DNA of 64,000 nt from the NCBI RefSeq assembly GCF_006345805.1, contig NC_043014.1, positions 46,190,001 through 46,254,000 of the forward strand, written 5' to 3'. This DNA comes from Octopus sinensis (lineage: Eukaryota). Positions within the stretch are counted from its first letter, which is position 1; each line of letters starts with the position of its first letter. The notes beneath the pieces are model-generated. The model saw only the letters and a list, made by a program, of their open reading frames with translations. It did no database searches and was not told where the DNA came from. Both the position numbers and the translations under genes were made by a program. This document shows positions 3,001 through 63,305 of the stretch, in pieces.

Positions 3001-6000
3001 AACACTATGATGTAGTGGATTTGATGCTATCCAAGGATTCAGGAGGCTGGCAGTTCAGCAGCAACACTATGATGTAGTGGATTTGATGCTATCCAAGGAT
3101 TCAGGAGGCTGGTAGTTCAGCAGCAACACTATGATGTAGTGGATTTGATGCTATCCAAGGATTCAGGAGGCTGGCAGTTCAGCATCAACGCTATGATGTA
3201 GTAGATTTGATGCTATCCAAGTATTCAGGAGGCTGGCAGTTCAACAGCAACACTATGATGTAGTGGATTTGATGCTATCCAAGGATTCAGGAGGCTGGCA
3301 GTTCAGCATCAACGCTATGATGTAGTAGATTTGATGCTATCCAAGGATTCAGGAGGCTGGCAGTTCAACAGCAACACTATGATGTAGTGGATTTGATGCT
3401 ATCCAAGGATTCAGGAGGCTGGTAGTTCAGCAGCAACACTATGATGTAGTGGATTTGATGCTATCCAAGGATTCAGGAGGCTGGCAGTTCAACAGCAACA
3501 CTATGATGTAGTGGATTTGATGCTATCCAAGGATTCAGGAGGCTGGCAGTTCAACAGCAACACTATGATGTAGTGGATTTGATGCTATCCAAGGATTCAG
3601 GAGGCTGGCAGTTCAGCAGCAACACTATGATGTAGTGGATTTGATGCTAACCAAGTATTCAGGAGGCTGGCAGTTCAGCAGCAACACTATGATGTAGTGG
3701 ATTTGATGCTATCCAAGGATTCAGGAGGCTGGCAGTTCAGCAGCAACACTATGATGTAGTGGATTTGATGCTATCCAAGGATTCAGGAGGCTGGCAGTTC
3801 AACAGCAACACTATGATGTAGTGGATTTGATGCTATCCAAGGATTCAGGAGGCTGGTAGTTCACAGCAACACTATGATGTAGTGGATTTGATGCTATCCA
3901 AGGATTCAGGAGGCTGGTAGTTCAGCAGCAACACTATGATGTAGTGGATTTGATGCTATCCAAGGATTCAGGAGGCTGGCAGTTCAGCAGCAACACTATG
4001 ATGTAGTGGATTTGATGCTATCCAAGGATTCAGGAGGCTGGCAGTTCAACAGCAACACTATGATGTAGTGGATTTGATGCTATCCAAGGATTCAGGAGGC
4101 TGGTAGTTCAGCAGCAACACTATGATGTAGTGGATTTGATGCTATCCAAGGATTCAGGAGGCTGGCAGTTCAGCAGCAACACTATGATGTAGTGGATTTG
4201 ATGCTATCCAAGGATTCAGGAGGCTGGCAGTTCAACAGCAACACTATGATGTAGTGGATTTGATGCTATCCAAGGATTCAGGAGGCTGGTAGTTCAACAG
4301 CAACACTATGATGTAGTGGATTTGATGCTATCCAAGGATTCAGGAGGCTGGTAGTTCAGCAGCAACACTATGATGTGGTGGATTTGATGCTATCCAGGAT
4401 TCAGGAGGCTGTAGTTCAGCAGCAACACTATGATGTAGTGGATTTGATGCTATCCAAGGATTCAGGAGGCTGGTAGTTCAGCAGCAACACTATGATGTGG
4501 ATTTGATGCTATCCAAGGATTCAGGAGGCTGGTAGTTCAGCAGCAACACTATGATGTAGTGGATTTGATGCTATCCAAGGATTCAGGAGGCTGGTAGTTC
4601 AACAGCAACACTATGATGTAGTGGATTTGATGCTATCCAAGGATTCAGGAGGCTGGTAGTTCAGCAGCAACACTATGATGTAGTGGATTTGATGCTATCC
4701 AAGGATTCAGGAGGCTGGTAGTTCAGCATGAACACTATGATGTAGTGGATTTGATGCTATCCAAGGATTCAGGAGGCTGGTAGTTCAGCAGCAACACTAT
4801 GATGTAGTGGATTTGATGCTATCCAAGGATTCAGGAGGCTGGCAGTTCAGCAGCAACACTATGATGTAGTGGATTTGATGCTATCCAAGGATTCAGGAGG
4901 CTGGCAGTTCAGCATGAACACTATGATGTAGTGGATTTGATGCTATCCAAGGATTCAGGAGGCTGGTAGTTCAGCAGCAACACTATGATGTAGTGGATTT
5001 GATGCTATCCAAGGATTCAGGAGGCTGGCAGTTCAGCAGCAACACTATGATGTAGTGGATTTGATGCTATCCAAGGATTCAGGAGGCTGGTAGTTCAGCA
5101 TGAACACTATGATGTAGTGGATTTGATGCTATCCAAGGATTCAGGAGGCTGGCAGTTCAACAGCAACACTATGATGTAGTGGATTTGATGCTATCCAAGG
5201 ATTCAGGAGGCTGGTAGTTCAGCAGCAACACTATGATGTAGTGGATTTGATGCTATCCAAGGATTCAGGAGGCTGGCAGTTCAACATCAACACTATGATG
5301 TAGTGGATTTGATGCTATCCAAGGATTCAGGAGGCTGGCAGTTCAGCAGCAACACTATGATGTAGTGGATTTGATGCTATCCAAGGATTCAGGAGGCTGG
5401 TAGTTCAGCATGAACACTATGATGTAGTGGATTTGATGCTATCCAAGGATTCAGGAGGCTGGCAGTTCAACAGCAACACTATGATGTAGTGGATTTGATG
5501 CTATCCAAGGATTCAGGAGGCTGGTAGTTCAGCAGCAACACTATGATGTAGTGGATTTGATGCTATCCAAGGATTCAGGAGGCTGGCAGTTCAACAGCAA
5601 CACTATGATGTAGTGGATTTGATGCTATCCAAGGATTCAGGAGGCTGGTAGTTCAGCAGCAACACTATGATGTAGTGGATTTGATGCTATCCAAGGATTC
5701 AGGAGGCTGGCAGTTCAACATCAACACTATGATGTAGTGGATTTGATGCTATCCAAGGATTCAGGAGGCTGGTAGTTCAGCAGCAACACTATGATGTAGT
5801 GGATTTGATGCTATCCAAGGATTCAGGAGGCTGGCAGTTCAACAGCAACACTATGATGTAGTGGATTTGATGCTATCCAAGGATTCAGGAGGCTGGTAGT
5901 TCAGCAGCAACACTATGATGTAGTGGATTTGATGCTATCCAGGATTCAGGAGGCTGGCAGTTCAACATCAACACTATGATGTAGTGGATTTGATGCTATC

Positions 6001-9000
6001 CAAGGATTCAGGAGGCTGGTAGTTCAGCAGCAACACTATGATGTAGTGGATTTGATGCTATCCAAGGATTCAGGAGGCTGGCAGTTCAACAGCAACACTA
6101 TGATGTAGTGGATTTGATGCTATCCAAGGATTCAGGAGGCTGGTAGTTCAGCAGCAACACTATGATGTAGTGGATTTGATGCTATCCAAGGATTCAGGAG
6201 GCTGGCAGTTCAACAGCAACACTATGATGTAGTGGATTTGATGCTATCCAAGGATTCAGGAGGCTGGTAGTTCAGCAGCAACACTATGATGTAGTGGATT
6301 TGATGCTATCCAAGATTCAGGAGGCTGGCAGTTCAGCAGCAACACTATGATGTAGTGGATTTGATGCTATCCAAGGATTCAGGAGGCTGGTAGTTCAGCA
6401 GCAACACTATGATGTAGTGGATTTGATGCTATCCAAGGATTCAGGAGGCTGGCAGTTCAACATCAACACTATGATGTAGTGGATTTGATGCTATCCAAGT
6501 ATTCAGGAGGCTGGCAGTTCAACAGCAACACTATGATGTAGTGGATTTGATGCTATCCAAGGATTCAGGAGGCTGGTAGTTCAGCAGCAACACTATGATG
6601 TAGTGGATTTGATGCTATCCAAGGATTCAGGAGGCTGGCAGTTCAGCAGCAACACTATGATGTAGTGGATTTGATGCTATCCAAGGATTCAGGAGGCTGG
6701 CAGTTCAACAGCAACACTATGATGTAGTGGATTTGATGCTATCCAAGGATTCAGGAGGCTGGCAGTTCAGCAGCAACACTATGATGTAGTGGATTTGATG
6801 CTATCCAAGGATTCAGGAGGCTGGTAGTTCAGCAGCAACACTATGATGTAGTGGATTTGATGCTATCCAAGGATTCAGGAGGCTGGCAGTTCAACATCAA
6901 CACTATGATGTAGTGGATTTGATGCTATCCAAGGATTCAGGAGGCTGGCAGTTCAGCAGCAACACTATGATGTAGTGGATTTGATGCTATCCAAGGATTC
7001 AGGAGGCTGGCAGTTCAGCAGCAACACTATGATGTAGTGGATTTGATGCTATCCAAGGATTCAGGAGGCTGGTAGTTCAGCAGCAACACTATGATGTAGT
7101 GGATTTGATGCTATCCAAGGATTCAGGAGGCTGGCAGTTCAACATCAACACTATGATGTAGATTTGATGCTATCCAAGGATTCAGGAGGCTGGCAGTTCA
7201 GCAGCAACACTATGATGTAGTGGATTTGATGCTATCCAAGGATTCAGGAGGCTGGCAGTTCAGCAGCAACACTATGATGTAGTGGATTTGATGCTATCCA
7301 AGGATTCAGGAGGCTGGTAGTTCAGCAGCAACACTATGATGTAGTGGATTTGATGCTATCCAAGGATTCAGGAGGCTGGCAGTTCAGCAGCAACACTATG
7401 ATGTAGTGGATTTGATGCTATCCAAGGATTCAGGAGGCTGGTAGTTCAGCAGCAACACTATGATGTAGTGGATTTGATGCTATCCAAGGATTCAGGAGGC
7501 TGGCAGTTCAACAGCAACACTATGATGTAGTGGATTTGATGCTATCCAAGGATTCAGGAGGCTGGTAGTTCAGCAGCAACACTATGATGTAGTGGATTTG
7601 ATGCTATCCAAGGATTCAGGAGGCTGGCAGTTCAACAGCAACACTATGATGTAGTGGATTTGATGCTATCCAAGGATTCAGGAGGCTGGTAGTTCAGCAG
7701 CAACACTATGATGTAGTGGATTTGATGCTATCCAAGTATTCAGGAGGCTGGTAGTTCAGCAGCAACACTATGATGTAGTGGATTTGATGCTATCCAAGGA
7801 TTCAGGAGGCTGGCAGTTCAACAGCAACACTATGATGTAGTGGATTTGATGCTATCCAAGGATTCAGGAGGCTGGTAGTTCAGCAGCAACACTATGATGT
7901 AGTGGATTTGATGCTATCCAAGGATTCAGGAGGCTGGTAGTTCAGCAGCAACACTATGATGTAGTGGATTTGATGCTATCCAAGGATTCAGGAGGCTGGC
8001 AGTTCAACAGCAACACTATGATGTAGTGGATTTGATGCTATCCAAGGATTCAGGAGGCTGGTAGTTCAGCAGCAACACTATGATGTAGTGGATTTGATGC
8101 TATCCAAGGATTCAGGAGGCTGGTAGTTCAGCAGCAACACTATGATGTAGTGGATTTGATGCTATCCAAGGATTCAGGAGGCTGGCAGTTCAGCAGCAAC
8201 ACTATGATGTAGTGGATTTGATGCTATCCAAGGATTCAGGAGGCTGGTAGTTCAGCAGCAACACTATGATGTAGTGGATTTGATGCTATCCAAGGATTCA
8301 GGAGGCTGGCAGTTCAGTAGCAACACTATGATGTAGTGGATTTGATGCTATCCAAGGATTCAGGAGGCTGGCAGTTCAGTAGCAACACTATGATGTAGTG
8401 GATTTGATGCTATCCAAGGATTCAGGAGGCTGGCAGTTCAGTAGCAACACTATGATGTAGTGGATTTGATGCTATCCAAGGATTCAGGAGGCTGGCAGTT
8501 CAACATCAACACTATGATGTAGTGGATTTGATGCTATCCAAGTATTCAGGAGGCTGGCAGTTCAACATCAACACTATGATGTAGTGGATTTGATGCTATC
8601 CAAGGATTCAGGAGGCTGGCAGTTCAACATCAACACTATGATGTAGTGGATTTGATGCTATCCAAGGATTCAGGAGGCTGGCAGTTCAGTAGCAACACTA
8701 TGATGTAGTGGATTTGATGCTATCCAAGGATTCAGGAGGCTGGCAGTTCAACATCAACACTATGATGTAGTGGATTTGATGCTATCCAAGGATTCAGGAG
8801 GCTGGCAGTTCAGCATCAACACTATGATGTGGTGGATTTGATGCTATCCAAGGATTCAGGAGGGTGGCAGTTCAGTAGCAACACTATGATGTAGTGGATT
8901 TGATGCTATCCAAGGATTCAGGAGGCTGGCAGTTCAGTAGCAACACTATGATGTAGTGGATTTGATGCTATCCAAGGATTCAGGAGGCTGGCAGTTCAAC

Positions 9001-12000
9001 AGCAACACTATGATGTAGTGGATTTGATGCTATCCAAGTATTCAGGAGGCTGGCAGTTCAACATCAACACTATGATGTAGTGGATTTGATGCTATCCAAG
9101 GATTCAGGAGGCTGGTAGTTCAGCAGCAACACTATGATGTGGTGGATTTGATGCTATCCAAGGATTCAGGAGGCTGGCAGTTCAACAGCAACACTATGAT
9201 GTAGTGGATTTGATGCTATCCAAGGATTCAGGAGGCTGGTAGTTCAGTAGCAACACTATGATGTAGTGGATTTGATGCTATCCAAGGATTCAGGAGGCTG
9301 GCAGTTCAGTAGCAACACTATGATGTAGTGGATTTGATGCTATCCAAGGATTCAGGAGGCTGGCAGTTCAGTAGCAACACTATGATGTAGTGGATTTGAT
9401 GCTATCCAAGGATTCAGGAGGCTGGCAGTTCAGCATCAACACTATGATGTAGTGGATTTGATGCTATCCAAGGATTCAGGAGGCTGGCAGTTCAGCAGCA
9501 ACACTATGATGTAGTGGATTTGATGCTATCCAAGGATTCAGGAGGCTGGCAGTTCAGTAGCAACACTATGATGTAGTGGATTTGATGCTATCCAAGGATT
9601 CAGGAGGCTGGCAGTTCAGCATCAACACTATGATGTAGTGGATTTGATGCTATCCAAGGATTCAGGAGGCTGGCAGTTCAGCATCAACACTATGATGTAG
9701 TGGATTTGATGCTATCCAAGGATTCAGGAGGCTGGCAGTTCAGTAGCAACACTATGATGTAGTGGATTTGATGCTATCCAAGTATTCAGGAGGCTGGCAG
9801 TTCAACAGCAACACTATGATGTAGTGGATTTGATGCTATCCAAGGATTCAGGAGGCTGGCAGTTCAGTAGCAACACTATGATGTAGTGGATTTGATGCTA
9901 TCCAAGGATTCAGGAGGCTGGCAGTTCAGTAGCAACACTATGATGTAGTGGATTTGATGCTATCCAAGGATTCAGGAGGCAGGCAGTTCAGCAGCAACAC
10001 TATGATGTAGTGGATTTGATGCTATCCAAGGATTCAGGAGGCTGGCAGTTCAGTAGCAACACTATGATGTAGTGGATTTGATGCTATCCAAGGATTCAGG
10101 AGGCAGGCAGTTCAGCAGCAACACTATGATGTAGTGGATTTGATGCTATCCAAGGATTCAGGAGGCTGGCAGTTCAGTAGCAACACTATGATGTAGTGGA
10201 TTTGATGCTATCCAAGGATTCAGGAGGCAGGCAGTTCAACAGCAACACTATGATGTAGTGGATTTGATGCTATCCAAGGATTCAGGAGGCTGGCAGCTCA
10301 GTAGCAACACTATGATGTAGTGGATTTGATGCTATCCAAGGATTCAGGAGGCAGGCAGTTCAACAGCAACACTATGATGTAGTGGATTTGATGCTATCCA
10401 AGGATTCAGGAGGCTGGCAGTTCAGCAGCAACACTATGATGTAGTGGATTTGATGCTATCCAAGGATTCAGGAGGCTGGCAGCTCAGTAGCAACACTATG
10501 ATGTAGTGGATTTGATGCTATCCAAGGATTCAGGAGGCTGGCAGTTCAGCAGCAACACTATGATGTAGTGGATTTGATGCTATCCAAGGATTCAGGAGGC
10601 TGGCAGTTCAGTAGCAACACTATGATGTAGTGGATTTGATGCTATCCAAGGATTCAGGAGGCTGGCAGTTCAGCAGCACAACACTATGATGTAGTGGATT
10701 TGATGCTATCCAAGGATTCAGGAGGCTGGCAGTTCAGTAGCACACACTATGATGTAGTGGATTTGATGCTATCCAAGGATTCAGGAGGCTGGCAGTTCAG
10801 TAGCAACACTATGATGTAGTGGATTTGATGCTATCCAAGGATTCAGGAGGCAGGCAGTTCAGTAGCAACACTATGATGTAGTGGATTTGATGCTATCCAA
10901 GGATTCAGGAGGCTGGCAGTTCAGCAGCAACACTATGATGTAGTGGATTTGATGCTATCCAAGGATTCAGGAGGCTGGCAGTTCAGCAGCAACACTATGA
11001 TGTAGTGGATTTGATGCTATCCAAGGATTCAGGAGGCTGGCAGTTCAGTAGCAACACTATGATGTAGTGGATTTGATGCTATCCAAGGATTCAGGAGGCA
11101 GGCAGTTCAGCAGCAACACTATGATGTAGTGGATTTGATGCTATCCAAGGATTCAGGAGGCTGGCAGTTCAGTAGCAACACTATGATGTAGTGGATTTGA
11201 TGCTATCCAAGGATTCAGGAGGCTGGCAGTTCAGTAGCAACACTATGATGTAGTGGATTTGATGCTATCCAAGGATTCAGGAGGCAGGCAGTTCAGTAGC
11301 AACACTATGATGTAGTGGATTTGATGCTATCCAAGTATTCAGGAGGCAGGCAGTTCAACATCAACACTATGATGTAGTGGATTGTATGCTATCCAAGTAT
11401 TCAGGAGGCTGGCAGTTCAACAGCAACACTATGATGTAGTGGATTTGATGCTATCCAAGGATTCAGGAGGCTGGCAGTTCAACATCAACACTATGATGTA
11501 GTGGATTGTATGCTATCCAAGTATTCAGGAGGCTGGCAGTTCAACAGCAACACTATGATGTAGTGGATTTGATGCTATCCAAGGATTCAGGAGGCTGGCA
11601 GTTCAGCAGCAACACTATGATGTAGTGGATTTGATGCTATCCAAGGATTCAGGAGGCTGGCAGTTCAACATCAACACTATGATGTAGTGGATTGTATGCT
11701 ATCCAAGTATTCAGGAGGCTGGCAGTTCAACAGCAACACTATGATGTAGTGGATTTGATGCTATCCAAGTATTCAGGAGGCTGGCAGTTCAACAGCAACA
11801 CTATGATGTAGTGGATTTGATGCTATCCAAGTATTCAGGAGGCTGGCAGTTCAGCATCAATACTATGATGTAGTGGGTTTGATGCTATCCAAGTATTCAG
11901 GAGGCTGGCAGTTCAACAGCAACACTATGATGTAGTGGGTTTGATGCTGTTCAAGGATTCAGGAGGATGGCAGTTCAGCAGCAACACTATGATGTAGTGG

Positions 12001-12130
12001 ATTTGATGCTATCCAAGTATTCAGGAGGCTGGCAGTTCAGCAGCAACACTATGATGCGGTGTGTAAGATGCTGTCCAAGTATTCAGGAGGCTGGTAGTTC
12101 AGCTGCAAAACTATAATGTAGTGACTGATG
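1..12130. repeat. 62-bp tandem satellite array, ~195 copies, truncated by window start
   Basis: Unit GATGCTATCCAAGGATTCAGGAGGCTGG(T/C)AGTTCAGCAGCAACACTATGATGTAGTGGATTT repeats with a 2-nt shift per 60-nt line. No ORF of 60 aa or more. Degenerates from ~11870 to 12130. Confidence 0.99.
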
Positions 12131-12534: not shown

Positions 12535-14630
12535 ATGAAGAAATTTGTATTTTATTCAGACCTTAGTGGGTCTGAATTATCACCAGAAGAACTGCATAAA
12601 GCAGTAAGAAAAATGGATAGAAAAGCCAAGAAGAAAAGTAAAACTTCGCAGAAGCAACAAGACAAGAGGATATTGACATCAAGAGAATTAGAAATTTTAA
12701 AAATTTGTAGAGAGGTATGATGTGGAATTGGCCCCGTCAAAGGAGCTATTGGAAGGTATCAGGAGGAGAACAATTACATACAAAACATTTTTTACAAAGG
12801 CAGGCAGAATAGAGAACACACACAAGCCAAACAGGGAAGTGCTCAGGCCCATGTGGCACAATATAGTTTTTCTAAAGAGAGGAACAAGATTTGATACATT
12901 GGAGGTGAGAACAAAATGCAAAGAAACAGGCAGCAAAGACAAAGTGGTGTTGTTGCCCACTTATATGGGCAGATTGACAACTAGGATTAAAGTTGAAGGT
13001 ATTCCATCTGAAATAGATGAGGACTGGGTAGTGGCCACAGTCCTCAAAAGGAAGTGAGGAGGATATGGTGCTGTAGGCCACAGGAACCAGATGTGAGATG
13101 TGGAGGGGAAAGACACTTGAGATGACAGTGCAGGCATCAGCAGAAACCTTGCGACAGGTAGCAGAGATGGTCTTGTTTGACAAAGCAGAGATGAGGATCA
13201 AGGTGGAGGGCAGAGTCCCAAGATGTTACAAATGTGGTCTAAAACGGCCACATTAGAGTGGCCTGCCCTTCACTGCTGGAGGAAAAAAGTGGAACAGTCA
13301 AAAAAAGTAGAAGAACCTGCAGAGATAATAGAAAAGGTATGGAAGGTGGTTGGCAGAAAGAAAAAAGTAATTTGAACTCAGAACCCCAATCAACACCCAC
13401 CCCATCCATATGCTCTCAGACCCCACCCTTCTCCCACAGGCACCAAGCCTACTCATTCCCTCCGACACAAAAACAAAAGAAACACAAGAAATCTCAAACT
13501 CCCTCCCCCACAGACAAAAAAGAAATGTGCAGTAGTGATAATTGATGATTCAAAAATGAGGATTTGTGCCAAGGGCAGAAATGGGATGATTTTAAGGAAA
13601 TAGGAACCCGTGGTTCCGACAATGTTAGGCGTCACCTATTGTGCTGCCAATGAAAGAACATTTGGAGAGAATAGTGAAACAAAAGTGAATATGAGTGGTG
13701 GTGGGAGGTAGAGTTGGACAGAGAGGAACTAGCAGAATTTTCAATGTACGAGGTAATACCAGAACTATATGGGACAGATATTCTGGAAGGAATGGGATAC
13801 AAAAGGTGGGGATCACCCAGAAGTGGAGCTGAGTGGCTCCATTCCGGTGGTGGGAGGTAGAGTTGGACAGAGAGGAATTAGCAGAATTTTCAATGTACGA
13901 GGAAATACCAGAACTATATGGGACAGACATTCTGGAAGGAATGGGATACAAAAGGTGGTAAAGGGTAGAAATGGGATCACCCAGAAGTGGGGCTGAGTGG
14001 CTCCATTCCGGCAGTGGGAGGTAGAGTTGGACAGAGAGGAACTAGCAGAATTTTCAATGTACGAGGTAATACCAGAACTATATGGGACAGATATTCTGGA
14101 AGGAATGGGATACAAAAGGTGGGGATCACCCAGAAGTGGGGCTGAGTGGCTCCATTCCGGTGGTGGGAGGTAGAGTTGGACAGAGAGGAATTAGCAGAAT
14201 TTTCAATGTACGAGGAAATACCAGAACTATATGGGACAGACATTCTGGAAGGAATGGGATACAAAAGGTGGTAAAGGGTAGAAATGGGATCACCCAGAAG
14301 TGGGGCTGAGTGGCTCCATTCCGGTGGTGGGAGGTAGAGTTGGACAGAGAGGAATTAGCAGAATTTTCAATGTACGAGGAAATACTAGAACTATATGGGA
14401 CAGACATTCTGGAAGGAATGGGATACAAAAGGTGATAAAGGGTAGAAATGGGATCACCCAGAAGTGGGGCTGAGTGGTTCCATTCCATTTCTTCGTTGCC
14501 ATGTTATCATTCATCTTGGTCATACATTTGTTTTTTGATTTGTCATTGTGTGTCCCCCCCAACATGTGATGTGTTGTCCCCTCTATGTTACCCCCAACCC
14601 TAGTGGGCAATAACGAATCGAGAAACAATG
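12535..14630 (+). mobile_element. Decayed gag/ORF1-like retroelement remnant with CCHC zinc knuckle
   Basis: Broken ORFs 12535-12720, 12722-13057 and 13258-13545. Removing one base at ~13245 from 13224-13266 gives CYKCGLKGHIRVAC (C-x2-C-x4-H-x4-C). A Lys/Pro/Ser-rich tail follows. No RT ORF is seen downstream. Confidence 0.7.
13690..14485 (+). repeat. Tandem repeat of alternating 149- and 164-bp monomers (313-bp higher-order unit)
   Basis: GGGAGGTAGAGTTGGACAG starts at 13703, 13852, 14016, 14165 and 14329. The long monomer carries a 15-bp extra segment. Confidence 0.95.
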
Positions 14631-15116: not shown

Positions 15117-15227
15117 AATTCATAAGAATTTTCCCCTCTTAGTGCTTGCTTTTTCCATGGGTATGAATAAGTATTTCACTTATATCTCACATATTTATCG
15201 CTGAAGAGGGGAAAATTCTTATGAATT
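15117..15227. mobile_element. Small MITE-like inverted repeat (24-bp perfect arms)
   Basis: AATTCATAAGAATTTTCCCCTCTT (15117-15140) is the exact reverse complement of 15204-15227. Confidence 0.6.
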
Positions 15228-15535
15228 AACCCCGAAATTGGGACCAATACGGTAATAACGGATTTTTTTAGAAATTTCTATCGGTTTGTTTCGAGATACA
15301 TAAATTATAATGGTTGACAATTTTGTCTTTTTTTCGGCATTAGAATTTTTCTTTTGCCCTTATTTTGTAAATTATTTATGTATATATCATCATCATCATC
15401 ATTTAACGTCCATTCTCCATGCTAGCATGGGTTGGACGGTTCGACCGGGGATCTGGGAAGCCAGAAGGCTGCACCAGGCTCCGGTCTTATCTGGCAATGT
15501 TTCTACAGCTGGATGCCCTTCCTAACACCAACCAC

Positions 15536-19180: not shown

Positions 19181-22100
19181 CTAGAAAAAGAGAAAACACC
19201 AAACTAAATTCTAAACAGACCAAACTTTTAAGTCGGGGGATAACACCTTTAAATACTCTTTTACTTGTTCCAGTCATTTGACTGTGGCCATGCTGGAGCA
19301 CCGCCTTAATAGTCGAGCAAATCGATCCCGGGACTTATCCTTACGGGGACGTAAACACACCAGCATCGGTTGTCAAGCGATGTTGTGGGGACAAACTCAG
19401 ACACACAAACACACATATATATATATACATACATATATACGAAGGGCTTCTTTCAGTTTCCGTCTACCAAATCCACTCACAAGGCATTGTTCGACCCGAG
19501 GCTATAGTAGAAGACACTTGCCCAAGGTGCCACGCAGTGGGACTGAACCCTGAACCATGTGGTTGGTAAGCAAGCTACTTACCACACAGCCACTTCTACG
19601 CCTATATGATGCATTTTTGCTAGTTTATAACTGGTGTTGATTTTTTATTAACCCTAAAGGTCTTACACAGAGGGGACACCACAACACATTGGGGACACAA
19701 AACATCAAAATACACTCACATATGATGAGAAAAAAGGTGAAAAATGAGAGATGAAAGTGATGTTAGCTGCCCCATCAGTCAACATCAATCGTCCTTTTCT
19801 TTCCATTTTGCCATGAATTCCACAAAGTCCACAAATTCAACCTCATATATTTCTCCTAGTTCCTCCCTCCCTTCCGGTGCCAATCTTCCCTTTAAGAACA
19901 TCTATTCATCCTCAGGTTGCTTTTCAAGTTCTTTCTCCCGACTTTTTTTGACATTACCAATTCCATTTTCTGATGCCAGCCATCTGGCATTTCTATCTTT
20001 CCCCATATTTTCAATCTTTCGTATAAATGTTTGCTGTCAATAATACCTATACAATATTCTTCAGAGTGGGGGTTTTGTGTTATTGTTTGTTTTCTGTTTT
20101 CTTGTTGGTGGGGAGTGGGTGGGACACAATGGGTGAGGGTGGTGCTGCCTTTATTTGGACTACACATTAAAAGTAATGCAGAGTTAGCCAACAAAATAGG
20201 GTAGGAGAAGGCTCTTTAGTTCTCCTGCAAAGGGGGAGGACCTCTACTGCTGGTGGCACAACACTGAGCTGACCCATTTCTCAGTTGGTGTGACGCCAAC
20301 AACATCCAGGTCAGCATGGAAAAGGTGAAATTTGTTATCATCATCATCGTTTAACGTCCGTTTTTCATTTTAGCATGGGTTGGACGGTTCGACTGGGGTC
20401 TGGGAAGCCATGGAGGCTGCACCAGGCTCCAATCTTGATTTGGCAGAGTTTCTACAGCTGGATGCCCTTCCTAACACCAACCACTCAGAGTGTAGTGGGT
20501 GCTTTTACGTGCCACCGGCAGTACTGGCAACGACCTCGCTTGAATCTTTTTACACACACCACCAGCACAGGTACCAGTAAAGCGACGTTGGTAACGATCA
20601 TGCTCAAATGATGCCCTTTTACATGCCACCGGCACTGAAGCCGGTTAGCCGCTCTGTCAACAATCACCCTCGGATGGTGCTGTTGGCACCCTACTCGCAC
20701 CAGTGCCAGTAAGGTGACGCTGGTAACGATCACACTCGAATGGTGCCTTTTATTTGCCACTGGCATGGAAGCCGGTTAGCCGCTCTGTCAACGATCACGC
20801 TCGTATGGTGGTCTTTGCACCCCGCTAGTATGGATGCCAGTCATCGAATGTGATTTTAATTAAAATAGCTTAAGGAAATATCTTCCTCTTAGACAAATGC
20901 AACAACTGGACTTTACCACAATAGAATATACTAAGGGGTTCTGAAAAGTTCCTGGCTTTGGGTAAAAGAATATAAAGGAGGATCAGTTAATGATTTTATT
21001 CAACATATTCCCCTTGAAGATTCATACACTTATTGCAATAGTCCCTCAGTTTTCCTAAGCTCTGTAAGAACTTAGGTTAGGCGTCTAACCAGGCCTTGTG
21101 AGATACCCTTAACCCTTTTGTTACCAACCCGGCTGAAACCGGCTCTGTAGTACAAATGTCTTATTTTCAAAAGTTTTGAATTAAAATCTTCCACCAAACC
21201 TTAGTCACAATTTATGTTCCTAACACTAGCTGAATGATAACTAAGTTCATTTACTAAATTCTTTGTTACATTTAAAGTAATTGAAAGAAACACAGAGCAT
21301 CTCAAAATAAATACAGTAACGAATGGATTAAATATATAATAGAGAAACAATTCTTAACCCTTTTAATACCAACCCAGCTGAAACCACTTCTGGCTCTGTA
21401 GTACAAATGTCTTGTTTTCATAAGTTTTAAATTGAAATCTTCCACCAAACCTTAGTCACAATTTATGTTCCTAACACTAGCTGAATGGAAACTAAGTTAT
21501 TTTACTAAGTTCTTTGTTATATTTAAAGTAATTGATGAAACACAGAGCATCTAAAAAAAAATACAGTAATGAAAGGGTTAAAGCCAGGCAATTCTCAGCA
21601 CCACCTTATGAAGAACTTTAAAAATACAAACCCTGGTTCATTGACATCAAGCTGGTCTTTCGATAACAAAATCGAGATACACGGAATGTCACGGTTCACA
21701 ATTAACCTGTAAAATAAATTCGTACAAGTTGGAAAGAGATCAACTTCCTACGTATATAATGCAGGGCATTCATAAATTATCTTTACGACAACTTCAGTTT
21801 GTTGTATTGTAATTGTCTATATTGGAGGCGCAATGGCCCAGTGGTTAGGGTAGCGGACTCGCGGTCATAGGATCGTGGTTTCGATTCCCAGACCGGGCAT
21901 TGTGAGTGTTTATTGAGCGAAAACACCTAAAGCTCCACGAGGCTCCGGCAGGGATGGTAGTGATCCCTACTGTACTCTTTCACCACAACTTTCTCTCACT
22001 CTTACTTCCTGTTTCTGTTGTACCTGTATTTCAAAGGGCTGGCCTTGTCACTGTGTCACGCTGAATATCCCCGAGAACTACGTTAAGGGTACACGTGTCT

Positions 22101-25100: not shown

Positions 25101-27531
25101 TAATTGGGAGTAATTTAAGATACTTATTTTTCATAAACTGATATTAATAGCTTTTGGAATACCACTTAAGATTCTTACATATATAATGTAAGGTTGGCAC
25201 ATCCATGCCAGTGGCACGTAAAAGACACCATTCGAGCGTGATCGTTACCAGCATCGCCTTACTGGCACCTGTGCCGGTGGCATGTGTAAAAGATTCGAGC
25301 CAGGTTGTTGCCAGTACTGCCTGACTGGCCCCGTGCTGGTTGCACATAAAAGCACCCGCTACACTCTCGGAGTGGTTGGCGTTAGGAAGGGCATCCAGCT
25401 GTAACTCTGCCAGATCAAGATTGGAGCCTGGTGCAGCCATCTGGTTCGCCAGCCCTCAGTCATTCGTCCAACCCATGCTAGCATGGAAAGCGGACGTTAA
25501 ACGATGACGGTTTTAATTTAAATATAGTCATTTTAAAATAAGCAGCTGAATATAACAATGAGGATTAATTTTAAAACAAGTCTAGACAACAATTAGTCCT
25601 ATTTTAAAAAGGATTTCATCAAAAACCTTATGAATAAAATCGTGTTCCAAGCCACTTTAATAAATGGCAAATTTTTACTAAGTTCATTATTTTCCAAATT
25701 GAAATCAAAAACCAAAATCAAATTCGATGACTGGCGTCCGTGCTAGCGGGATGCAAAGAGCACCATACGAGTGTGATCATTGACAGAGCGGCTAACCGGC
25801 TTCCGTGCCAGTAGCACTTAAAAGGCACCATTTGAGCGTGATCATTACCAGCGTCGCACTACTGGCACTCAAGCACCGTGCTTGTAGGGTATTAAGAGCA
25901 CCAACTGAGCGTGATCGTTGCCAGAGCGGCTATCTGGCCTCTGTGCCGGTGGCACATAAAAAAAACACCATTTGAGCGTGATCTTTATCAGCATCTCCTT
26001 ACTGGCCCCGTGCCGGTGGCACGTAAAAGCACCCGCTACACTCTCGGAGTGGTTGGTGTTAGGAAGGGCATCCAGCTGTAGAAACCGCCATTTCACTGGT
26101 TCGCCAGCCCTCAGTCATTCGTCCAACCCATGCTAGCATGGAAAGCGAACATTAAACGATGATGATGATGAAACAAAACCATTGCTCTTCAATAAGTATT
26201 AGGTCAAAGATGGAAAATTGACAGGGGTAGTATATTGAAGGGAAAGAACTAGTACAATTTCCAATTTATACCTTATGAAATTTGACAAACACTAGAGTCG
26301 ACCCGATAGCAACTACATGGTCACTCGATATGCTAGACATAGCAATCAAGTTTTCCTTAAATCACATCCAACTTAACAGCATGTTGAAAACCAAACTCAA
26401 TGATTGTAGCCAAAATATTTTTGGCATTCTTTCAGTTTGTGATCACAAAATGAAAGTGAAAGTAATGCTGTCACCCTGCTCTATTTCTTTGGGTTCCAAT
26501 ACTTTTAGGAATGGAAAGCACACTTTCACAAAAATGTTTATTTTCCCACCTCACAAACTTTTTTTGTAGAGGCTGGGCAATTCGATATTTGAAAATACAG
26601 ATGACTGAAAAAATTTCAAAATTTATTTCAGAAATATGGTAAAATATAGAGTGGTTGTATACTGTCAACATAACGTGACAGTCCCGTAAAGGGAATTACA
26701 CCACCGCTGTTTAGCCCTAGGAAGCATCAACACTTCCTGTCGGCCTTGACACATTTCCTGTGTCCTTATATATTTACGCTCCACCAGTCCTTTACTTGTT
26801 TCAGTCATTTGACTGCAGCCATGCTGGAGCACTGCCTTTAATCGAGCAACTCGACCCCAGGACTTATTCTTTTGTAAGCCCAGTACTTATTCTATCGGTC
26901 TATTTTGCCTTACATATCTCTGAGATATTTAGAAATTTAATATTTCTGATTTTGGTGATCAGTGAATAAACTTCACTGAAAATAAATAAAATAAAAATAT
27001 ACATATATATATATATATATATATTTACGAAGTCCAGACAGATATCTTCAGCTAGCAGGCCTTTGCTACTCTAGACTGATGATGGGCAAAGACCCAGAAA
27101 CATGCGTGTCTCTAGATGCAGGCCTAGCTATTGGGGGTATTTGTCTCCCCTTCGTAAATAAATAAGGACACAGTAAATGTGTCGAGGCCGACAGGAAGCA
27201 TTCGATGCTTCTTAGGGCTCAACAGCGGTGGTGTAATTCCCTTACGGGACTGTCACGTTAAGTTGACAGTATACAACCACTCTATTGCTCCACCACCGTA
27301 CATATCTCTATGGGGTATTTAGAAATACAATATTACTGATTTTGGTAAAATATATAATAGTAGAAAAAACAGAAAGCTACAAACCTGCATTTTGTTCAAA
27401 GCAAGTCCAATTAAATTACGTATCTTACTGCCATAGTGGACTGTCATAACAATATCGTCTTTCTGTAATTCCAAATGGGGGCCTTTAGACTCCTCGACAG
27501 TGACAACATCTCCTTTAGTGTAGTTTTCCAT
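19027..27531 (-). CDS. RPP25L: Alba-domain RNase P/MRP subunit p25-like protein, 181 aa, six coding exons: 27531-27385, 24941-24849, 24758-24724, 23208-23167, 21706-21632, 19180-19027
   Basis: All introns are GT-AG and phase-compatible; CDS is 546 nt. Translation MENYTKGDVV...VHYGSKIRNLIGLALNKMQ|NSNTKRIVWTGSGPAITKTITCAEIMKHKIE|GLHQLNKLAYER|VKESWLPKIKGLEK|LIVNRDIPCISILLSKDQLDVNEPG|YQAPGK...GRSL* matches the RPP25/RPP25L motifs GSKIRNL, GSG-A--K---CAEI, GLHQL and LLSRDPLD-NE-GYQ-PG. Confidence 0.93.
19258..19605 (-). mobile_element. SINE family C copy
   Basis: Reverse complement of the family C head and tail (tail CCAGCATGGCC...TGACTGGAACAAGTAAAA), internally deleted. Confidence 0.85.
19665..20250 (-). 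mobile_element. Diverged relative of the 3' part of the 12.5-14.6 kb ORF1-like element
   Basis: Minus-strand peptide EEYCIGIIDSK resembles KKCAVVIIDDSK at ~13520-13560. The 3' end TGTGTCCCC...GTGTCCCCTCTGTGTAA resembles 14550-14590. Confidence 0.45.
20338..20850 (-). mobile_element. 5'-truncated RTE LINE 3' end with (GAT)n tail
   Basis: GGTTGG(C/T)GTTAGGAAGGGCATCCAGCTGTAGAAA...CATGCTAGCATGGAAAACGGACGTTAAACGATGATG family. Other copies at ~15385-15535, 23533-23745, 25200-25510, 25715-26170, 37460-37700, 46725-46900, 50365-50630, 53290-53690, 53990-54375, 54914-55233 and 55338-55695. Confidence 0.75.
21109..21581 (+). mobile_element. piggyBac-like MITE tandem dimer (TTAA|CCCTTT...AAAGGG|TTAA)
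   Basis: TTAA flanks, CCCTTT/AAAGGG termini, two ~245-bp units joined by the linker ATATATAATAGAGAAACAATTC. Confidence 0.85.
21632..21706 (-). CDS. RPP25L: RPP25-like coding exon 5
   Basis: TTTTACAG|GTTAATT...CCAGG|GTTTGT; LIVNRDIPCISILLSKDQLDVNEP(G). Confidence 0.92.
22520..22996 (+). mobile_element. piggyBac-like MITE tandem dimer, second insertion
   Basis: Same structure and linker as 21109-21581 but different outer flanks. Confidence 0.85.
23167..23208 (-). CDS. RPP25L: RPP25-like coding exon 4
   Basis: TTTTTAG|AGTCAAAG...GAAAA|GTAAGT; VKESWLPKIKGLE(K). Confidence 0.9.
24724..24758 (-). CDS. RPP25L: RPP25-like coding exon 3
   Basis: TTTTCAG|GGCCTTCAT...GAAAG|GTAAAT; GLHQLNKLAYE(R). 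Confidence 0.92.
24849..24941 (-). CDS. RPP25L: RPP25-like coding exon 2
   Basis: TTGCAG|AATTCC...ATAGAG|GTTGAG; 93 nt. Confidence 0.92.
26646..27285 (+). mobile_element. Penelope-like element (PLE) remnant with inverted terminal segment and hammerhead ribozyme
   Basis: ~130-bp inverted arms 26646-26778 and 27153-27285. Starts next to a (TA)n run. Contains the hammerhead at 27050-27129. A flanking segment is duplicated (26778-26960 vs 27287-27347). Confidence 0.65.
27050..27129 (+). ncRNA. Type I hammerhead ribozyme, intact core
   Basis: Stem I TCTAGA (27070-75) / TCTAGA (27111-16); CTGATGA 27076-82; stem II TGGG-caaaga-CCCA; GAAA 27097-100; stem III AC-ATGCGT-GT; cleavage triplet GTC 27108-10. 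Stem I extends through bulges to AGCTAG/CTAGCT. Confidence 0.85.
27385..27531 (-). CDS. RPP25L: RPP25-like coding exon 1 (ATG; exon begins at acceptor 27550)
   Basis: ORF 27319..27531. Donor CAG|GTTTGT. Upstream acceptor TTCTCAACAG implies a further non-coding exon. Confidence 0.93.
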
Positions 27532-35010: not shown

Positions 35011-36444
35011 TTTTTTATTTTTTTTATTTTATCTAGTTTCAGCTCACGGACTGTGGCCATGCTGGGGCACTGCCATTTGGTGTTGCTACATGATTTTACT
35101 TCACAAATGCTTTTTATCAACTGCCATTTAGTGCATGAGAGAGTTTGATGCAGCTGCCCTCATCTGCACCTCCTGCCGTGAAGTTGGTTCATCTGGGACA
35201 CCTGATAGGAAGAGATCCAGTTTTATTTTAAACACATCTGCATCCACCCCATGCAGGTCTCTCAGGTTCTTCGAGAGGATATTGAAGATCTGTGGGCCTC
35301 GGAAGCCCAGGCTATCACAGTATCTTGTCCTACATCTTGATGGCAAATTTGGAGTCCTTGGCAACATGCAGTGGCGCCCAATTCTAGCATTTGTGTAACT
35401 CTCGATGCCAAAGTTTGGGACAAGTCCTTCTAGGATCTTCCAGATGTATATTATGGCATATCTTTCTCGCCTACGCTTTAAGGAATAGAGTCTTAATCTT
35501 TTGAGTCTTTCCCAGTAGCTTATATGCTGCACAGAGGCTATCTTCTTCGTGTAGCTTCGTTGGATCGCCTCAAGTTCTGTGATTAACTTGACACTGGATG
35601 GTGACCATAGCTGAGAGCAATAGTCAAAGTGGCTTAGGACAAGTGTCCTCCAGAGGACCATCACGGTTTCCTGGTCTCTTGTTCTAATGGTTCTAAGAAT
35701 CCATCCAGTTAGCCGCCTACATTTCATTGCCAATTTAGCAACATGCACATGAAAGGTTGCATCATCACTCATGTAAATACCCAGGTCGCGCACTGATTGT
35801 GTCTCTGGGATTGCAATCCCTCCAGGTCCAGTGTATTTATTGGGTATTGCATTTAGTTTTGCATGCTGATAGCATAAAGCTTGAAATTTTTCAGCATTGA
35901 ACTGCATGCTATTCTTTTCAGCCCACTTGTGTATTTTGTCCAGCTCACATTGCAGGTGCTTAGTGTCTCCAGGGTTCTGTATTGCCTGTGAAACTTTTGT
36001 ATCATCTGCATAACTTGTGATCGTGGCTCTCTGCATGGCTGAGGGCATGTCTGAGAGGGCCATTATGAACAGTAGTGGTCCCAAACCAGTGCCTTGCGGA
36101 ACACCGCTCACTATTTGCGTGTTAATGGAAGTGGCCCCATTGGCTACTACCACCTGACTTCTATCCTTTAGAAGTCATGAAGCCATTCTCCCAGTTTTCC
36201 AACTATGTTGAGATCACGCAGTTTGTGACATATCATTCCATGATCGACTTTATCAAAGGCCTTTGCAAAGTCGAGATATATGACTTCCACATTTGAGTGG
36301 TTGAGCAGTTGTTTCAACACCCAGTCATAGTGTTGTAGGAGCTGAGTTAAGCAGCTTCTTCCTGGTTGGAAACCATGTTGGGTGTCAGGCAGCAAGTAAT
36401 TTTCTTCAAGGAAGGTGATTAGTTTCCTTCTGACTATTCGTTCC
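35011..36444 (-). mobile_element. 5'-truncated CR1-clade LINE (RT), one frameshift, A-rich tail, 19-bp TSD
   Basis: QHGFQPGRSCLTQLL, YLDFAKAFDKVDH, SGVPQG-LGPLLF, YADDT. A 1-nt loss near 36170 separates the two ORFs (HDFL KDRSQVVVANG). TSD ATATATAGTATA(A/T)ATAGTA at 34992-35010 and 36445-36463. Confidence 0.93.
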
Positions 36445-36758
36445 ATATATAGTATATATAGTAAAATGAAATGAAGTATTGATTATCTTATTGAATAGAT
36501 GAAATGTTGAATATCAAATATTAAGGGACTAGTATACTTTCTTGCATTAAAGCAGTATTCAAGGTCCCAGGTTGTGACAGGAGTATTTCAACTGTGGTTG
36601 ACTGGCTGTCTTTTGTCCTTTATATACATTCCTGTGGACAGCAGTAGTAGCTATTAACAATTGAGGATAAAATCTTTAAAAGAAATTATCAGTAGTCAGC
36701 GTGAAAAACCTCGTAAGAGAAAAAATCCGTAAATTCTTCCTCTTTGAAACTATTCATT

Positions 36759-38033: not shown

Positions 38034-61648
<23,615 letters not shown>

Positions 61649-62824: not shown

Positions 62825-63305
62825 CACTCCTGTCACAACCTGGGACCTTGAAGACTGCTATAATGCAAGAAAGTCTACTAGTCCCTTAATATTTTATATT
62901 CAATATTTCATCTATTCAATAAGACAATCAATACATCATTTCATTTTATGATATATATAGTAAATCTCTGAGCGAGGTATAGACATTGTCGTGCGCTGAT
63001 AACGGGTAAATACCCAGAAACCCGGGTCCATGCGTATCACATAGGTTGACGATGGGAAGGATGGCTTCCCTTTGCAAATACCGATAGGGCACAGAAAGTG
63101 TGTCAACAGCCAGCTGGAGAAGATGTTCTCCTGGGGCTACAAGCAACAGTAACATCCACCCTTTGTGGTTAGCCACATTTAAGTGGCTAATATACTTCAC
63201 ATATATATATACTATTTATACTATATATCCTATATTCTACATTAATATTATTATAAAGAATATAAATAAAACATAAAAAACAGAGTTGGAATTCCTTTGA
63301 ATAAT
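62825..63305. repeat. AT-rich dispersed repeat; inverted copy is the LINE target at 34752-35010 + 36445-36600
   Basis: 62825-62960 mirrors 36445-36600 and 63200-63305 mirrors 34755-34850. This copy has an unrelated ~230-bp insert at 62960-63190. Confidence 0.75.

What the first reader, a model, noticed from the sequence alone, without database searches (positions are those of the whole stretch)
27050..27129. Intact type I hammerhead ribozyme antisense in the first coding intron of the RPP25-like gene
Seen: every conserved hammerhead nucleotide is present (CUGAUGA, GAAA, GUC triplet), with a 6-bp stem I extended by bulged helices and a 4-bp stem II with a 6-nt loop. Stem III (ACAUGCGUGU) is too tight for a monomer (2-nt loop) but pairs fully with itself in trans (two G-U pairs). 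It is one CpG-type change away from the perfect palindrome ACACGCGUGU. Established: Penelope-like retroelements and retrozymes carry such hammerheads, and palindromic stem III versions cleave as dimers. Inference: this is a possibly still-active ribozyme of a cephalopod PLE/retrozyme family. It lies on the strand opposite the host pre-mRNA, so it would be tolerated.
Basis: partly seen in the sequence, partly recalled or inferred. Interest (0 to 1): 0.8.

Follow-up and report, generated by a model that had tools for sequence, protein, structure and literature searches.

The report
Hammerhead ribozyme in a retroelement copy
The motif is a real, apparently intact type I hammerhead ribozyme, but it sits in one stranded copy of a short ribozyme-carrying retroelement of a kind already known to litter animal genomes, so it is a sound but fairly ordinary find.

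Summary
On the + strand, 27070-27116 has every catalytic-core nucleotide of a type I hammerhead. Helix I is 6 bp, helix II is 4 bp with a 6-nt loop, and helix III (ACAUGCGUGU) is nearly palindromic, with cleavage expected after C27110.

A covariance model built only from the validated Schistosoma-derived N79 ribozyme finds it as the sole significant hit in the window (30.8 bits; next best 11.1). My descriptor scan expects 0.005 such motifs per shuffled window. Rfam's own hammerhead models report nothing, and the usually conserved G10.1-C11.1 pair is U-A here.

The ribozyme is the 5' part of a ~262-nt structured, non-coding element (27024-27285). A diverged, decayed relative lies at 62960-63200, where the ribozyme block is the best-conserved part. 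An inverted 5'-truncated copy lies at 26646-26781.

Three features resemble Penelope-like element or non-LTR retrozyme insertions: the inverted truncated copy, a ~60-nt direct duplication, and (TA)n at the 5' boundary. No RT/endonuclease ORF, tandem ribozyme pair or outside copy was found.

It lies antisense in intron 1 of an RPP25-like gene in an octopod-like genome. It is a new member of a known kind. Activity is untested, and a role at this locus is unlikely.

The parts
27050..27129 (+). Type I hammerhead ribozyme motif with extended, bulged helix I (the finding). Helix I 27070-75/27111-16; CUGAUGA 27076-82; helix II plus loop 2 27083-96; GAAA 27097-27100; near-palindromic helix III 27100-09; C17 = 27110, predicted cleavage 27110|27111.
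   Evidence: Direct reading; descriptor scan against shuffles; N79-derived covariance model 30.8 bits; folds.
27024..27158 (+). Long imperfect hairpin (rod) enclosing the ribozyme. The arms tttacgaag.../...cttcgtaaa extend helix I.
   Evidence: Inverted repeat I4. MFE of 27020-27295 is -109 kcal/mol, z = -7.7.
27153..27285 (+). Structured 3' module of the element, made of four hairpins. All three copies end at the same 3' position (..ccactctat).
   Evidence: Alignment and consensus fold of three copies: 34 pairs, 10 kept through changes on both sides. Copies found.
26646..26781 (-). Inverted, 5'-truncated copy of the element (3' module only, no ribozyme). It is 93-94% identical to 27153-27285 (JC distance 0.063).
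26957..27023 (.). A/T-rich stretch ending in (TA)n, directly abutting the 5' end of the element.
   Evidence: The diverged copy at 62960 is likewise flanked by (TA)n on both sides.
26779..26956 (+). Upstream copy (T1) of a ~60-nt direct duplication (ctccacca...ctgattttggt). It is interrupted by a later insertion of a 5'-truncated abundant SINE at about 26790-26909 on the - strand.
   Evidence: T1 against T2 local alignment score 70, shuffles reach at most 32.
27286..27346 (+). Downstream copy (T2) of the direct duplication, directly after the 3' end of the element. It is either a long target-site duplication or a PLE-style tail / partial tandem.
62960..63200 (+). Diverged, decayed member of the same element family (E2). 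It has CTGATAA (G8 to A), cggg/ccca (C.A at 10.1-11.1), loop 2 taaata, GAAA, the perfectly palindromic helix III ACCCGGGT, GTC, then the same hairpin module. It is embedded in (TA)n.
   Evidence: nhmmer E1 against the window E=5e-7; alignment; per-segment identity 22/25 in the core, helix II, loop 2 and GAAA block against 44% in the module; N79 model 11.1 bits.
27385..27531 (-). First coding exon of the host RPP25-like (Alba-type) gene. A GT donor follows at 27384, so the element lies in intron 1 on the opposite strand.
   Evidence: ORF list; tblastn with human RPP25/RPP25L sequences recalled from memory: exon 1 27531-27385, exon 2 about 24962-24852, exon 3 about 21705-21628.

Best explanation
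The 27050-27129 stretch is a genuine canonical metazoan type I hammerhead ribozyme. It forms the 5' part of a ~262-nt non-coding, highly structured retroelement copy (27024-27285). The copy is a solo (monomeric) offspring of a short ribozyme-bearing non-autonomous retroelement family. That family is of the kind described as non-LTR retrozymes or PLE pseudo-LTR derivatives, and it resembles Schistosoma Sm-alpha.

Inferred life cycle:
1. Master copies elsewhere, probably tandem, are transcribed.
2. Two adjacent ribozymes pair through their palindromic helix III into a double hammerhead and cut the RNA to unit length.
3. The RNA is reverse-transcribed from a fixed 3' site by a Penelope-like RT/GIY-YIG enzyme supplied in trans.
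4. It is inserted at (TA)n-like sites. This often leaves an inverted 5'-truncated copy plus a partial direct duplication.

The copy in the RPP25-like intron has only one ribozyme and lies antisense to the host transcript. It cannot cut the host pre-mRNA. By itself it could cleave only inefficiently as a monomer, or in trans with a second transcript. It most likely has no function at this locus.

Shown: the motif, its statistical significance, family membership within the window, the dimer thermodynamics, and its position and strand in the host gene. Inferred: PLE mobilisation, the tandem masters, and catalytic activity.
For: Motif:
- All core nucleotides and the three helices are present in type I topology.
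- 0.005 such motifs are expected per shuffled window.
- A model built from the validated N79/Sm1 ribozyme (sequence from PMC12550524) gives 30.8 bits, full length. All 10 helix I and II pairs differ from Sm1 yet remain paired. The loop-1 'UAC' and loop-2 'CAAA.A' are retained. The null maximum is 12.5 bits.
- The architecture matches the published definition of canonical metazoan type I hammerheads: helix I 6 bp, helix II 4 bp, and a short helix III with a palindromic loop that works as a dimer (PMC4209133).
- The cofold MFE dimer is the double hammerhead, 11.9 kcal/mol better than two monomers.

Family:
- E2 at 62960-63200 is homologous (E=5e-7).
- The catalytic block is its best-conserved segment, 22/25 against 44% in the module.
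- E2 has a different but again palindromic helix III.
- The 3' module keeps its hairpins through 10 compensatory pairs.

Insertion anatomy:
- An inverted 5'-truncated copy lies next to a direct partial duplication, with (TA)n at the boundary.
- This matches the PLE insertion pattern described in PMC8557442, and the optional tail explained by two RT start sites in PMC11167929.
- All three copies share the same 3' end.
- Dispersed monomers of retrozyme families are common, and about 43% are intronic in Xenopus (bioRxiv 10.64898/2026.07.22.740005).
- PLEs are abundant in octopus genomes (PMC13282606).
Against: - Rfam 15 hammerhead models do not report the site at any threshold tried.
- The 10.1-11.1 pair is U-A instead of the 'highly conserved G10.1-C11.1' (PMC4209133).
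- There is no second ribozyme in tandem, so the defining retrozyme arrangement is absent at this locus.
- There is no RT/GIY-YIG ORF. The longest stop-free stretch near either copy is at most 147 aa, and the only RT in the window is LINE-like.
- The ribozyme is of the canonical type rather than the 'minimal' type reported for most metazoan PLE pseudo-LTRs.
- No copies could be retrieved from any public collection. Protein-space searches with translations found none, DNA patterns found none, and a module 19-mer gave only chance hits. Family size, tandem masters and covariation therefore remain unknown.
- The monomer MFE is an inactive fold in which CUGAUG pairs with the helix III strand.
- The ~60-nt duplication could be a target-site duplication or part of the element. 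It is not detectable next to the other two copies.
Confidence: 0.72

Rival explanations
1. It is the terminal part (solo pseudo-LTR or extreme 5'-truncated copy) of an autonomous Penelope-like element, not a member of a dedicated non-autonomous retrozyme/SINE-like family.
For: PLE pseudo-LTRs carry hammerheads, and most genomic PLE hammerheads occur as single motifs from truncated PLEs, sometimes as pairs on opposite strands 100-700 bp apart (PMC4209133). Retrozyme consensus sequences are sister to PLE pseudo-LTRs. The insertion architecture here is PLE-like.
Against: E1 and E2 are very diverged, yet both begin about 40-52 nt upstream of the ribozyme core at a (TA)n boundary and have no ORF remnant upstream. 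That points to a discrete short unit rather than random 5' truncation. The ribozyme is the canonical 6-bp/4-bp type with Sm1-like loops, not the minimal type with a 7-8-bp helix II reported for metazoan PLEs.
Confidence: 0.2
2. It is a ribozyme-bearing SINE mobilised by a LINE (as proposed for Schistosoma Sm-alpha), unrelated to PLE machinery.
For: It is a short non-coding unit with a defined 5' end and a common 3' end in three copies. LINEs and SINEs dominate this window and octopus genomes.
Against: The 3' end has no poly(A) or simple-repeat tail, and the module shows no similarity to the LINE in the window or to the abundant SINE. No tRNA-like part was found. The inverted truncated copy, long direct duplication and (TA)n boundary fit PLE insertions better.
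Confidence: 0.1
3. It is a chance hammerhead look-alike inside a hairpin-rich repeat, with no ribozyme ancestry.
For: Rfam models are silent. At 0.005 per 64 kb, a genome of a few Gb would hold on the order of a hundred chance matches to my strict descriptor (extrapolated). G10.1-C11.1 is missing.
Against: Several features outside the descriptor also fit. They are the Sm1-like loop-1 UAC and loop-2 CAAAGA, the palindromic helix III, and the exact 6/4-bp geometry. A homologous element 36 kb away keeps the same block as its best-conserved segment and also has a palindromic helix III. The score of 30.8 bits compares with a null maximum of 12.5.
Confidence: 0.04
4. It is a domesticated ribozyme with a role at this locus, for example processing an antisense transcript that regulates the RPP25-like gene. 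This would be analogous to the conserved intronic hammerheads of amniotes.
For: The core is intact although the sister copy of the 3' module has diverged by about 6%. Intronic hammerheads conserved in RECK, CTCL and DTNB are known (PMC6155905).
Against: Those conserved examples map to host-gene introns, and a role in mRNA biogenesis has been suggested for them. This one is antisense to its host gene. Intactness is compatible with neutral drift: about 1.5 hits are expected in the ~39 constrained positions, and one (C to T in helix III) is visible (inference). The copy carries the marks of an ordinary insertion. No orthologous locus could be examined.
Confidence: 0.03

Closest known systems
Canonical metazoan type I hammerhead ribozymes (Schistosoma Sm-alpha/Sm1 and its engineered form N79; newt satellite 2; cave-cricket pDo500)
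   Same: Identical catalytic core and the same geometry: helix I 6 bp, helix II 4 bp, 6-nt loop 2 of the form CAAA.A, and 'UAC' directly 5' of helix I. Helix III is short and (near-)palindromic, favouring a double-hammerhead dimer.
   Different: All helix I and II base pairs differ in sequence. The 10.1-11.1 pair is U-A instead of G-C. Helix I continues as a ~55-bp rod. It occurs as a single dispersed copy, not in a satellite or tandem array. Rfam hammerhead models do not pick it up.
Non-LTR retrozymes of animals (Cervera & de la Pena 2020, PMC7229834; Li et al. 2026 preprint)
   Same: A type I hammerhead in a short (150-450 bp class), non-coding, low-GC (0.39-0.47) and strongly structured unit. 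The flanking duplication is long. Dispersed monomers, many of them intronic, are part of the known picture.
   Different: There is no tandem repeat of units with one ribozyme each at this locus. No unit-length or circular RNA can therefore be made from it, and circRNA expression could not be examined.
Penelope-like elements (pseudo-LTR hammerheads; insertion architecture)
   Same: An inverted 5'-truncated copy lies next to a direct partial duplication. There is an optional extra 3' 'tail' in one copy but not in its inverted partner. A (TA)n microsatellite lies at the boundary, and a hammerhead is present.
   Different: There is no RT/GIY-YIG ORF. The ribozyme is of the canonical, not the 'minimal', type. 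The duplicated segment (~60 nt) is longer than the 30-40-bp tail described.

Membership tests
Hammerhead ribozyme, type I | Catalytic core C3 U4 G5 A6 N7 G8 A9 / G12 A13 A14 / A15.1-U16.1 / H17 | tested here: met
   CTGATGA 27076-82, GAAA 27097-27100, U16.1 27109, C17 27110.
Hammerhead ribozyme, type I | Three helices around the core, with helix I open (5' and 3' ends in helix I) | tested here: met
   Helix I 6 bp, helix II 4 bp, helix III 3 bp as a monomer or 10 bp as a dimer. Aligned end to end with the N79 model.
Hammerhead ribozyme, type I | Highly conserved G10.1-C11.1 pair | tested here: not met
   U27083-A27096 here. E2 has C.A. The pair is described as highly conserved in PMC4209133.
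Hammerhead ribozyme, type I | Loop 1 / loop 2 nucleotides for tertiary contacts as in Sm1 | tested here: met
   'UAC' lies 5' of helix I, and loop 2 CAAAGA compares with CAAAUA in N79. The contacts themselves were not modelled.
Hammerhead ribozyme, type I | Score at or above the gathering threshold of an Rfam hammerhead model | tested here: not met
   No hammerhead family reported at gathering or at E<=10. The reason is unknown. A model built from one validated type I ribozyme gives 30.8 bits.
Hammerhead ribozyme, type I | Site-specific self-cleavage giving 2',3'-cyclic phosphate and 5'-OH | not testable with these tools
   Needs in vitro transcription and a cleavage assay.
Non-LTR retrozyme | Tandem repeats (two or more units), each with a type I hammerhead | tested here: not met
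   There is only one ribozyme. The only direct repeat is the ~60-nt T1/T2 at a spacing of 390 nt.
Non-LTR retrozyme | Short non-coding unit (~150-450 bp) with low GC | tested here: met
   262 nt at GC 0.47, or 390 nt at GC 0.39 with the A/T-rich stretch and T2. No ORF.
Non-LTR retrozyme | Expression as small circular RNAs | not testable with these tools
   No transcriptome data available.
Penelope-like element | ORF with telomerase-like RT and GIY-YIG endonuclease | tested here: not met
   The longest stop-free stretch within several kb of either copy is at most 147 aa. The RT ORFs at 35128-36446 are LINE-like: a YADD motif, the RVT_1 family, and a C-terminal region that I recall as typical of LINEs.
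Penelope-like element | Insertion signature: partial tandem (pseudo-LTR), adjacent inverted 5'-truncated copy, optional tail, microsatellite target | tested here: inconclusive
   All four features have a counterpart here. With one locus and no empty site, the ~60-nt duplication cannot be assigned to a target-site duplication or a tail.

The most novel reading that the evidence does not exclude
Octopod genomes carry a live family of short retroelements with Sm1-type hammerheads that have a U-A 10.1-11.1 pair. They would be mobilised by Penelope-like enzymes and possibly expressed as circular RNAs. Rfam-based censuses, such as the 235 'hammerhead 1' loci reported for the giant squid, would miss them altogether, so cephalopod ribozyme content would be strongly undercounted.
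Probability: 0.3. Interest if true: 0.45.

Novelty: new member of a known kind. Interest (0 to 1): 0.3.

Why it matters
This is a clean, checkable example of a canonical type I hammerhead in an octopod-like genome. It sits in an element whose anatomy links the retrozyme-type ribozyme to PLE-style insertion marks.

It also shows that standard Rfam annotation can miss such ribozymes completely, which matters for ribozyme censuses in molluscs. If the U10.1-A11.1 variant cleaves well, it would add a natural data point on tolerance at a position usually treated as conserved.

For the host gene it probably matters little, because the copy is antisense, intronic and solitary.

Tried and rejected
- **Rfam 15 scans.** The whole window at gathering score, and 901-nt and 101-nt stretches at E<=10, gave no hammerhead family. 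The low-score hits (nos_TCE, miRNAs, CRISPR-DR36) are noise.
- **Protein database with host exon 1.** No hit. An exact look-up of the exon-1 ORF found nothing on record.
- **Six-frame translations of the element used as proxies for DNA copies.** No hit. The exhaustive HMMER search of the module frame returned only repeat-translation junk.
- **DNA pattern scans for the ribozyme block.** Zero hits in metagenome, viral and prokaryotic genome contigs. A conserved module 19-mer gave 27 hits that do not extend beyond the pattern, so they are chance.
- **An Argonauta hians locus of 21 kb.** It shares SINE-like repeats but has no member of this element family and no hammerhead.
- **A possible fourth copy at 39013-39149** (nhmmer E=0.056). 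It is part of the abundant SINE and was rejected.
- **The idea that the ~60-nt duplicated segment belongs to the element.** It shows no significant similarity to the 3' flanks of the other two copies, so this stays open.
- **Helix I covariation from E2.** In the register that keeps GUC, 5 of 6 pairs form with a different sequence. An alternative alignment with an 8-nt insertion after GAAA is equally possible, so I do not count it as evidence.
- **tRNA-like parts.** None found.
Full report
**1. The observation**

On the + strand the sequence reads tctaga CTGATGA tggg caaaga ccca GAAA catgcgtg TC tctaga (27070-27116). This is a complete type I hammerhead.
- Helix I is 6 bp, and helix II is 4 bp closed by a 6-nt loop.
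- The core boxes CUGAUGA and GAAA are present.
- Helix III is ACAUGCGUGU, and the cleavage triplet GUC places C17 at 27110.

A helix-aware descriptor scan of both strands finds this site. It expects 0.005 hits of equal quality, or 0.055 with loose settings, per dinucleotide-shuffled window. The same scan finds no strict hit in 159 kb of unrelated DNA.

**2. An independent model test**

I built a covariance model from a single experimentally used ribozyme, the Schistosoma Sm1-derived N79. Its sequence is printed in PMC12550524. Searched without filters over the whole window, the model gives one significant hit: 27065-27121 at 30.8 bits, E about 1.5e-5, aligned over all 63 model positions. The next best hit in the window is 11.1 bits. 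The best in 93 kb of unrelated DNA is 12.5 bits.

In that alignment every one of the ten helix I and II pairs differs from Sm1 and is still a pair. The core, the 'UAC' directly 5' of helix I, and the loop-2 pattern CAAA.A are identical. The geometry is exactly what Cervera and de la Pena define as the canonical metazoan type I hammerhead. That is helix I of 6 bp, helix II of 4 bp, and a short helix III with a palindromic loop that is unstable as a monomer and active as a dimer (PMC4209133).

**3. Points against, or corrections**

- Rfam 15 reports no hammerhead family here, either at gathering score or at E<=10 on 901 nt or 101 nt. I cannot explain this. I suspect the seed is dominated by near-identical GUCC/GGAC helix II sequences, but that is inference.
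- The 10.1-11.1 pair, 'highly conserved' as G-C (PMC4209133), is U-A here. This may reduce activity.
- Helix III is not strictly impossible in a monomer. With 3 bp and a UGCG loop, the active fold lies only 2.0 kcal/mol above the MFE. That MFE is an inactive fold pairing CUGAUG with the helix III strand.
The RNAcofold minimum-energy homodimer is the double hammerhead with a 10-bp helix III, at -60.7 kcal/mol against -48.8 for two monomers.

**4. What the ribozyme sits in**

The ribozyme is followed by a 133-nt module of four hairpins (27153-27285). The whole 27020-27295 stretch folds at -109 kcal/mol, z = -7.7. The module recurs inverted at 26646-26781 with a JC distance of 0.063, cut off exactly at the base of the ribozyme rod.

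A much more diverged relative (E2) lies at 62960-63200 (nhmmer E=5e-7). It has the same order of parts:
- CTGATAA, that is G8 to A, which should be inactivating;
- cggg/ccca with loop taaata;
- GAAA, then a different but perfectly palindromic helix III (ACCCGGGT), then GTC;
- the hairpin module, with 10 of 34 pairs kept through changes on both sides.

Between the two elements, the block from CTGA to GAAA is 22/25 identical, while the module is 44% identical. The ribozyme is therefore the most constrained part of the family. All three copies end at the same 3' position. The two full copies begin 40-52 nt upstream of the core, at a (TA)n boundary. No ORF accompanies either copy: the longest stop-free stretch is 147 aa. 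This is a short non-coding retroelement family that carries a hammerhead. E1 (the 27024-27285 copy) has an intact ribozyme and E2 a decayed one.

**5. Insertion anatomy**

From left to right the locus reads:
- the inverted truncated copy (26646-26781);
- a ~60-nt segment T1, starting at 26779 and later split by a 5'-truncated abundant SINE at about 26790-26909;
- an A/T-rich stretch ending in (TA)n (26957-27023);
- the full element (27024-27285);
- a second copy of the ~60-nt segment, T2 (27286-27346).

T1 against T2 is highly significant. T is not detectable next to the other two copies. A 12-mer, TGGTAAAATATA, flanks the whole composite (p about 0.05). So T is either a long target-site duplication or a PLE-style tail / partial tandem.

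Three features match the descriptions of Penelope-like element insertions in PMC8557442: an inverted 5'-truncated copy next to a partial direct duplication, an optional extension at one end, and microsatellite targets. They also match the two RT start sites that explain the tail in PMC11167929. That is the basis, and the only basis, for linking this element to PLE machinery.

**6. Host and genome**

tblastn with human RPP25 and RPP25L sequences (recalled from memory) places exon 1 at 27531-27385 on the - strand. Exon 2 falls near 24962-24852 and a further exon near 21705-21628. The element is thus antisense in intron 1.

A LINE RT ORF in the window has its best named relative in Argonauta hians at 61% amino-acid identity. 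Several SINE-like repeats are 80-85% identical to an A. hians locus. 'Cephalopod' is therefore supported, more precisely octopod-like. PLEs are a sizeable and recently active repeat class in Octopus vulgaris (PMC13282606).

**7. How it most likely works**

The family's masters, probably tandem copies elsewhere, would be transcribed. They would be cut to unit length by double hammerheads formed between neighbouring units. The RNA would then be reverse-transcribed from a fixed 3' site and inserted by a PLE-type RT/endonuclease.

The copy studied here is a solitary offspring. It cannot form a cis dimer and cannot yield a unit-length or circular RNA. It cannot touch the host pre-mRNA, because the ribozyme is on the other strand.

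Its intact core needs no selection at this locus. With about 3% divergence per copy since the duplication, about 1.5 changes are expected in the roughly 39 constrained positions. One, the helix III C to T, is visible. This estimate is inference.

Dispersed monomers of retrozyme families, about 43% of them intronic in Xenopus, are already described (preprint 10.64898/2026.07.22.740005).

**8. Comparison and novelty**

The ribozyme works like, and by structure is, a canonical type I hammerhead of the Sm1, newt and retrozyme type. It departs at 10.1-11.1 and in failing the Rfam models.

The element resembles a non-LTR retrozyme unit but fails the tandem criterion at this locus. It resembles a PLE pseudo-LTR but has no ORF and carries a canonical rather than a minimal ribozyme.

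Hammerheads in PLEs and retrozymes number in the thousands in many animals. Rfam found 235 'hammerhead 1' loci in the giant squid (PMC6962438). I rate this a new member of a known kind.

The most novel reading still open is that octopods hold an active, Rfam-invisible family of such elements.

**9. Limits**

No copy outside the window could be retrieved from any collection available. Family size, covariation across many copies, tandem masters, the empty site and transcription are therefore all untested. Catalysis needs the bench.

Noticed in passing
window 62960-63200 (+): A diverged, decayed second member of the same ribozyme-bearing element family. It has G8 to A, C.A at 10.1-11.1 and a palindromic helix III ACCCGGGT, and it is embedded in (TA)n.
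   Followed up: yes
window 15201-15249 (+), with inverted repeat 15117-15140 / 15204-15227: A second motif passes the hammerhead descriptor. It has CTGAAGA, helix I of 6 bp, helix II gggg/cccc with a long extension, the near-palindromic helix III AUUGGGACCAAU, and cleavage UA|C. Its cofold dimer is a double hammerhead (-40.9 against 2 x -14.6 kcal/mol). However, it scores only 8.6 bits with the N79 model (noise level) and folds no better than shuffles (z = -0.64). A perfect 24-nt inverted repeat overlaps it.
   Followed up: partly
window 60079-60143 (-): A weak hammerhead-like match (GGUAAC GCAUG CUGAAGA ... GAAACCAGUC) at 9.4 bits with the N79 model. This is within the noise range, so it may be a decayed relic or nothing.
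   Followed up: no
window 1-12123: A satellite array with a 62-bp unit, 196 copies and 96% matches. It has strong GC skew (+0.25) and no ORF of 70 aa or more.
   Followed up: no
window 13701-14486: A tandem repeat with a 164/313-bp period (2-4 copies, 91-98% matches), giving a series of near-identical overlapping ORFs on both strands.
   Followed up: no
window 38252-38373, 38811-38930, 62041-62161, 56525-56637, 57004-57123, 58894-59013, 19257-19342, 26788-26909: An abundant SINE with an internal microsatellite that ends ...gtcaaatgactgaaacaagtaaaagagtaaaag. One 5'-truncated copy has inserted into the duplicated segment next to the ribozyme element. Other SINE-like repeats in the window are 80-85% identical to an Argonauta hians locus (L029).
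   Followed up: partly
window 35128-36446 (-): LINE-type reverse transcriptase ORFs (RVT_1), 61% identical at the amino-acid level to a hypothetical protein of Argonauta hians. This is not a Penelope-like RT.
   Followed up: partly
window 27040-27140, 15150-15300 and the whole window: Rfam 15 reports no hammerhead family anywhere in the window. This holds even for the motif that a single-sequence model of the Schistosoma-derived N79 ribozyme scores at 30.8 bits. It may be a blind spot of the curated models for this kind of type I hammerhead.
   Followed up: partly
window 46426-46662 (-) and 58095-58520 (-): Two ORFs that look like real coding exons, possibly of a ciliary/flagellar protein gene on the - strand, judged by eye only.
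   Followed up: no
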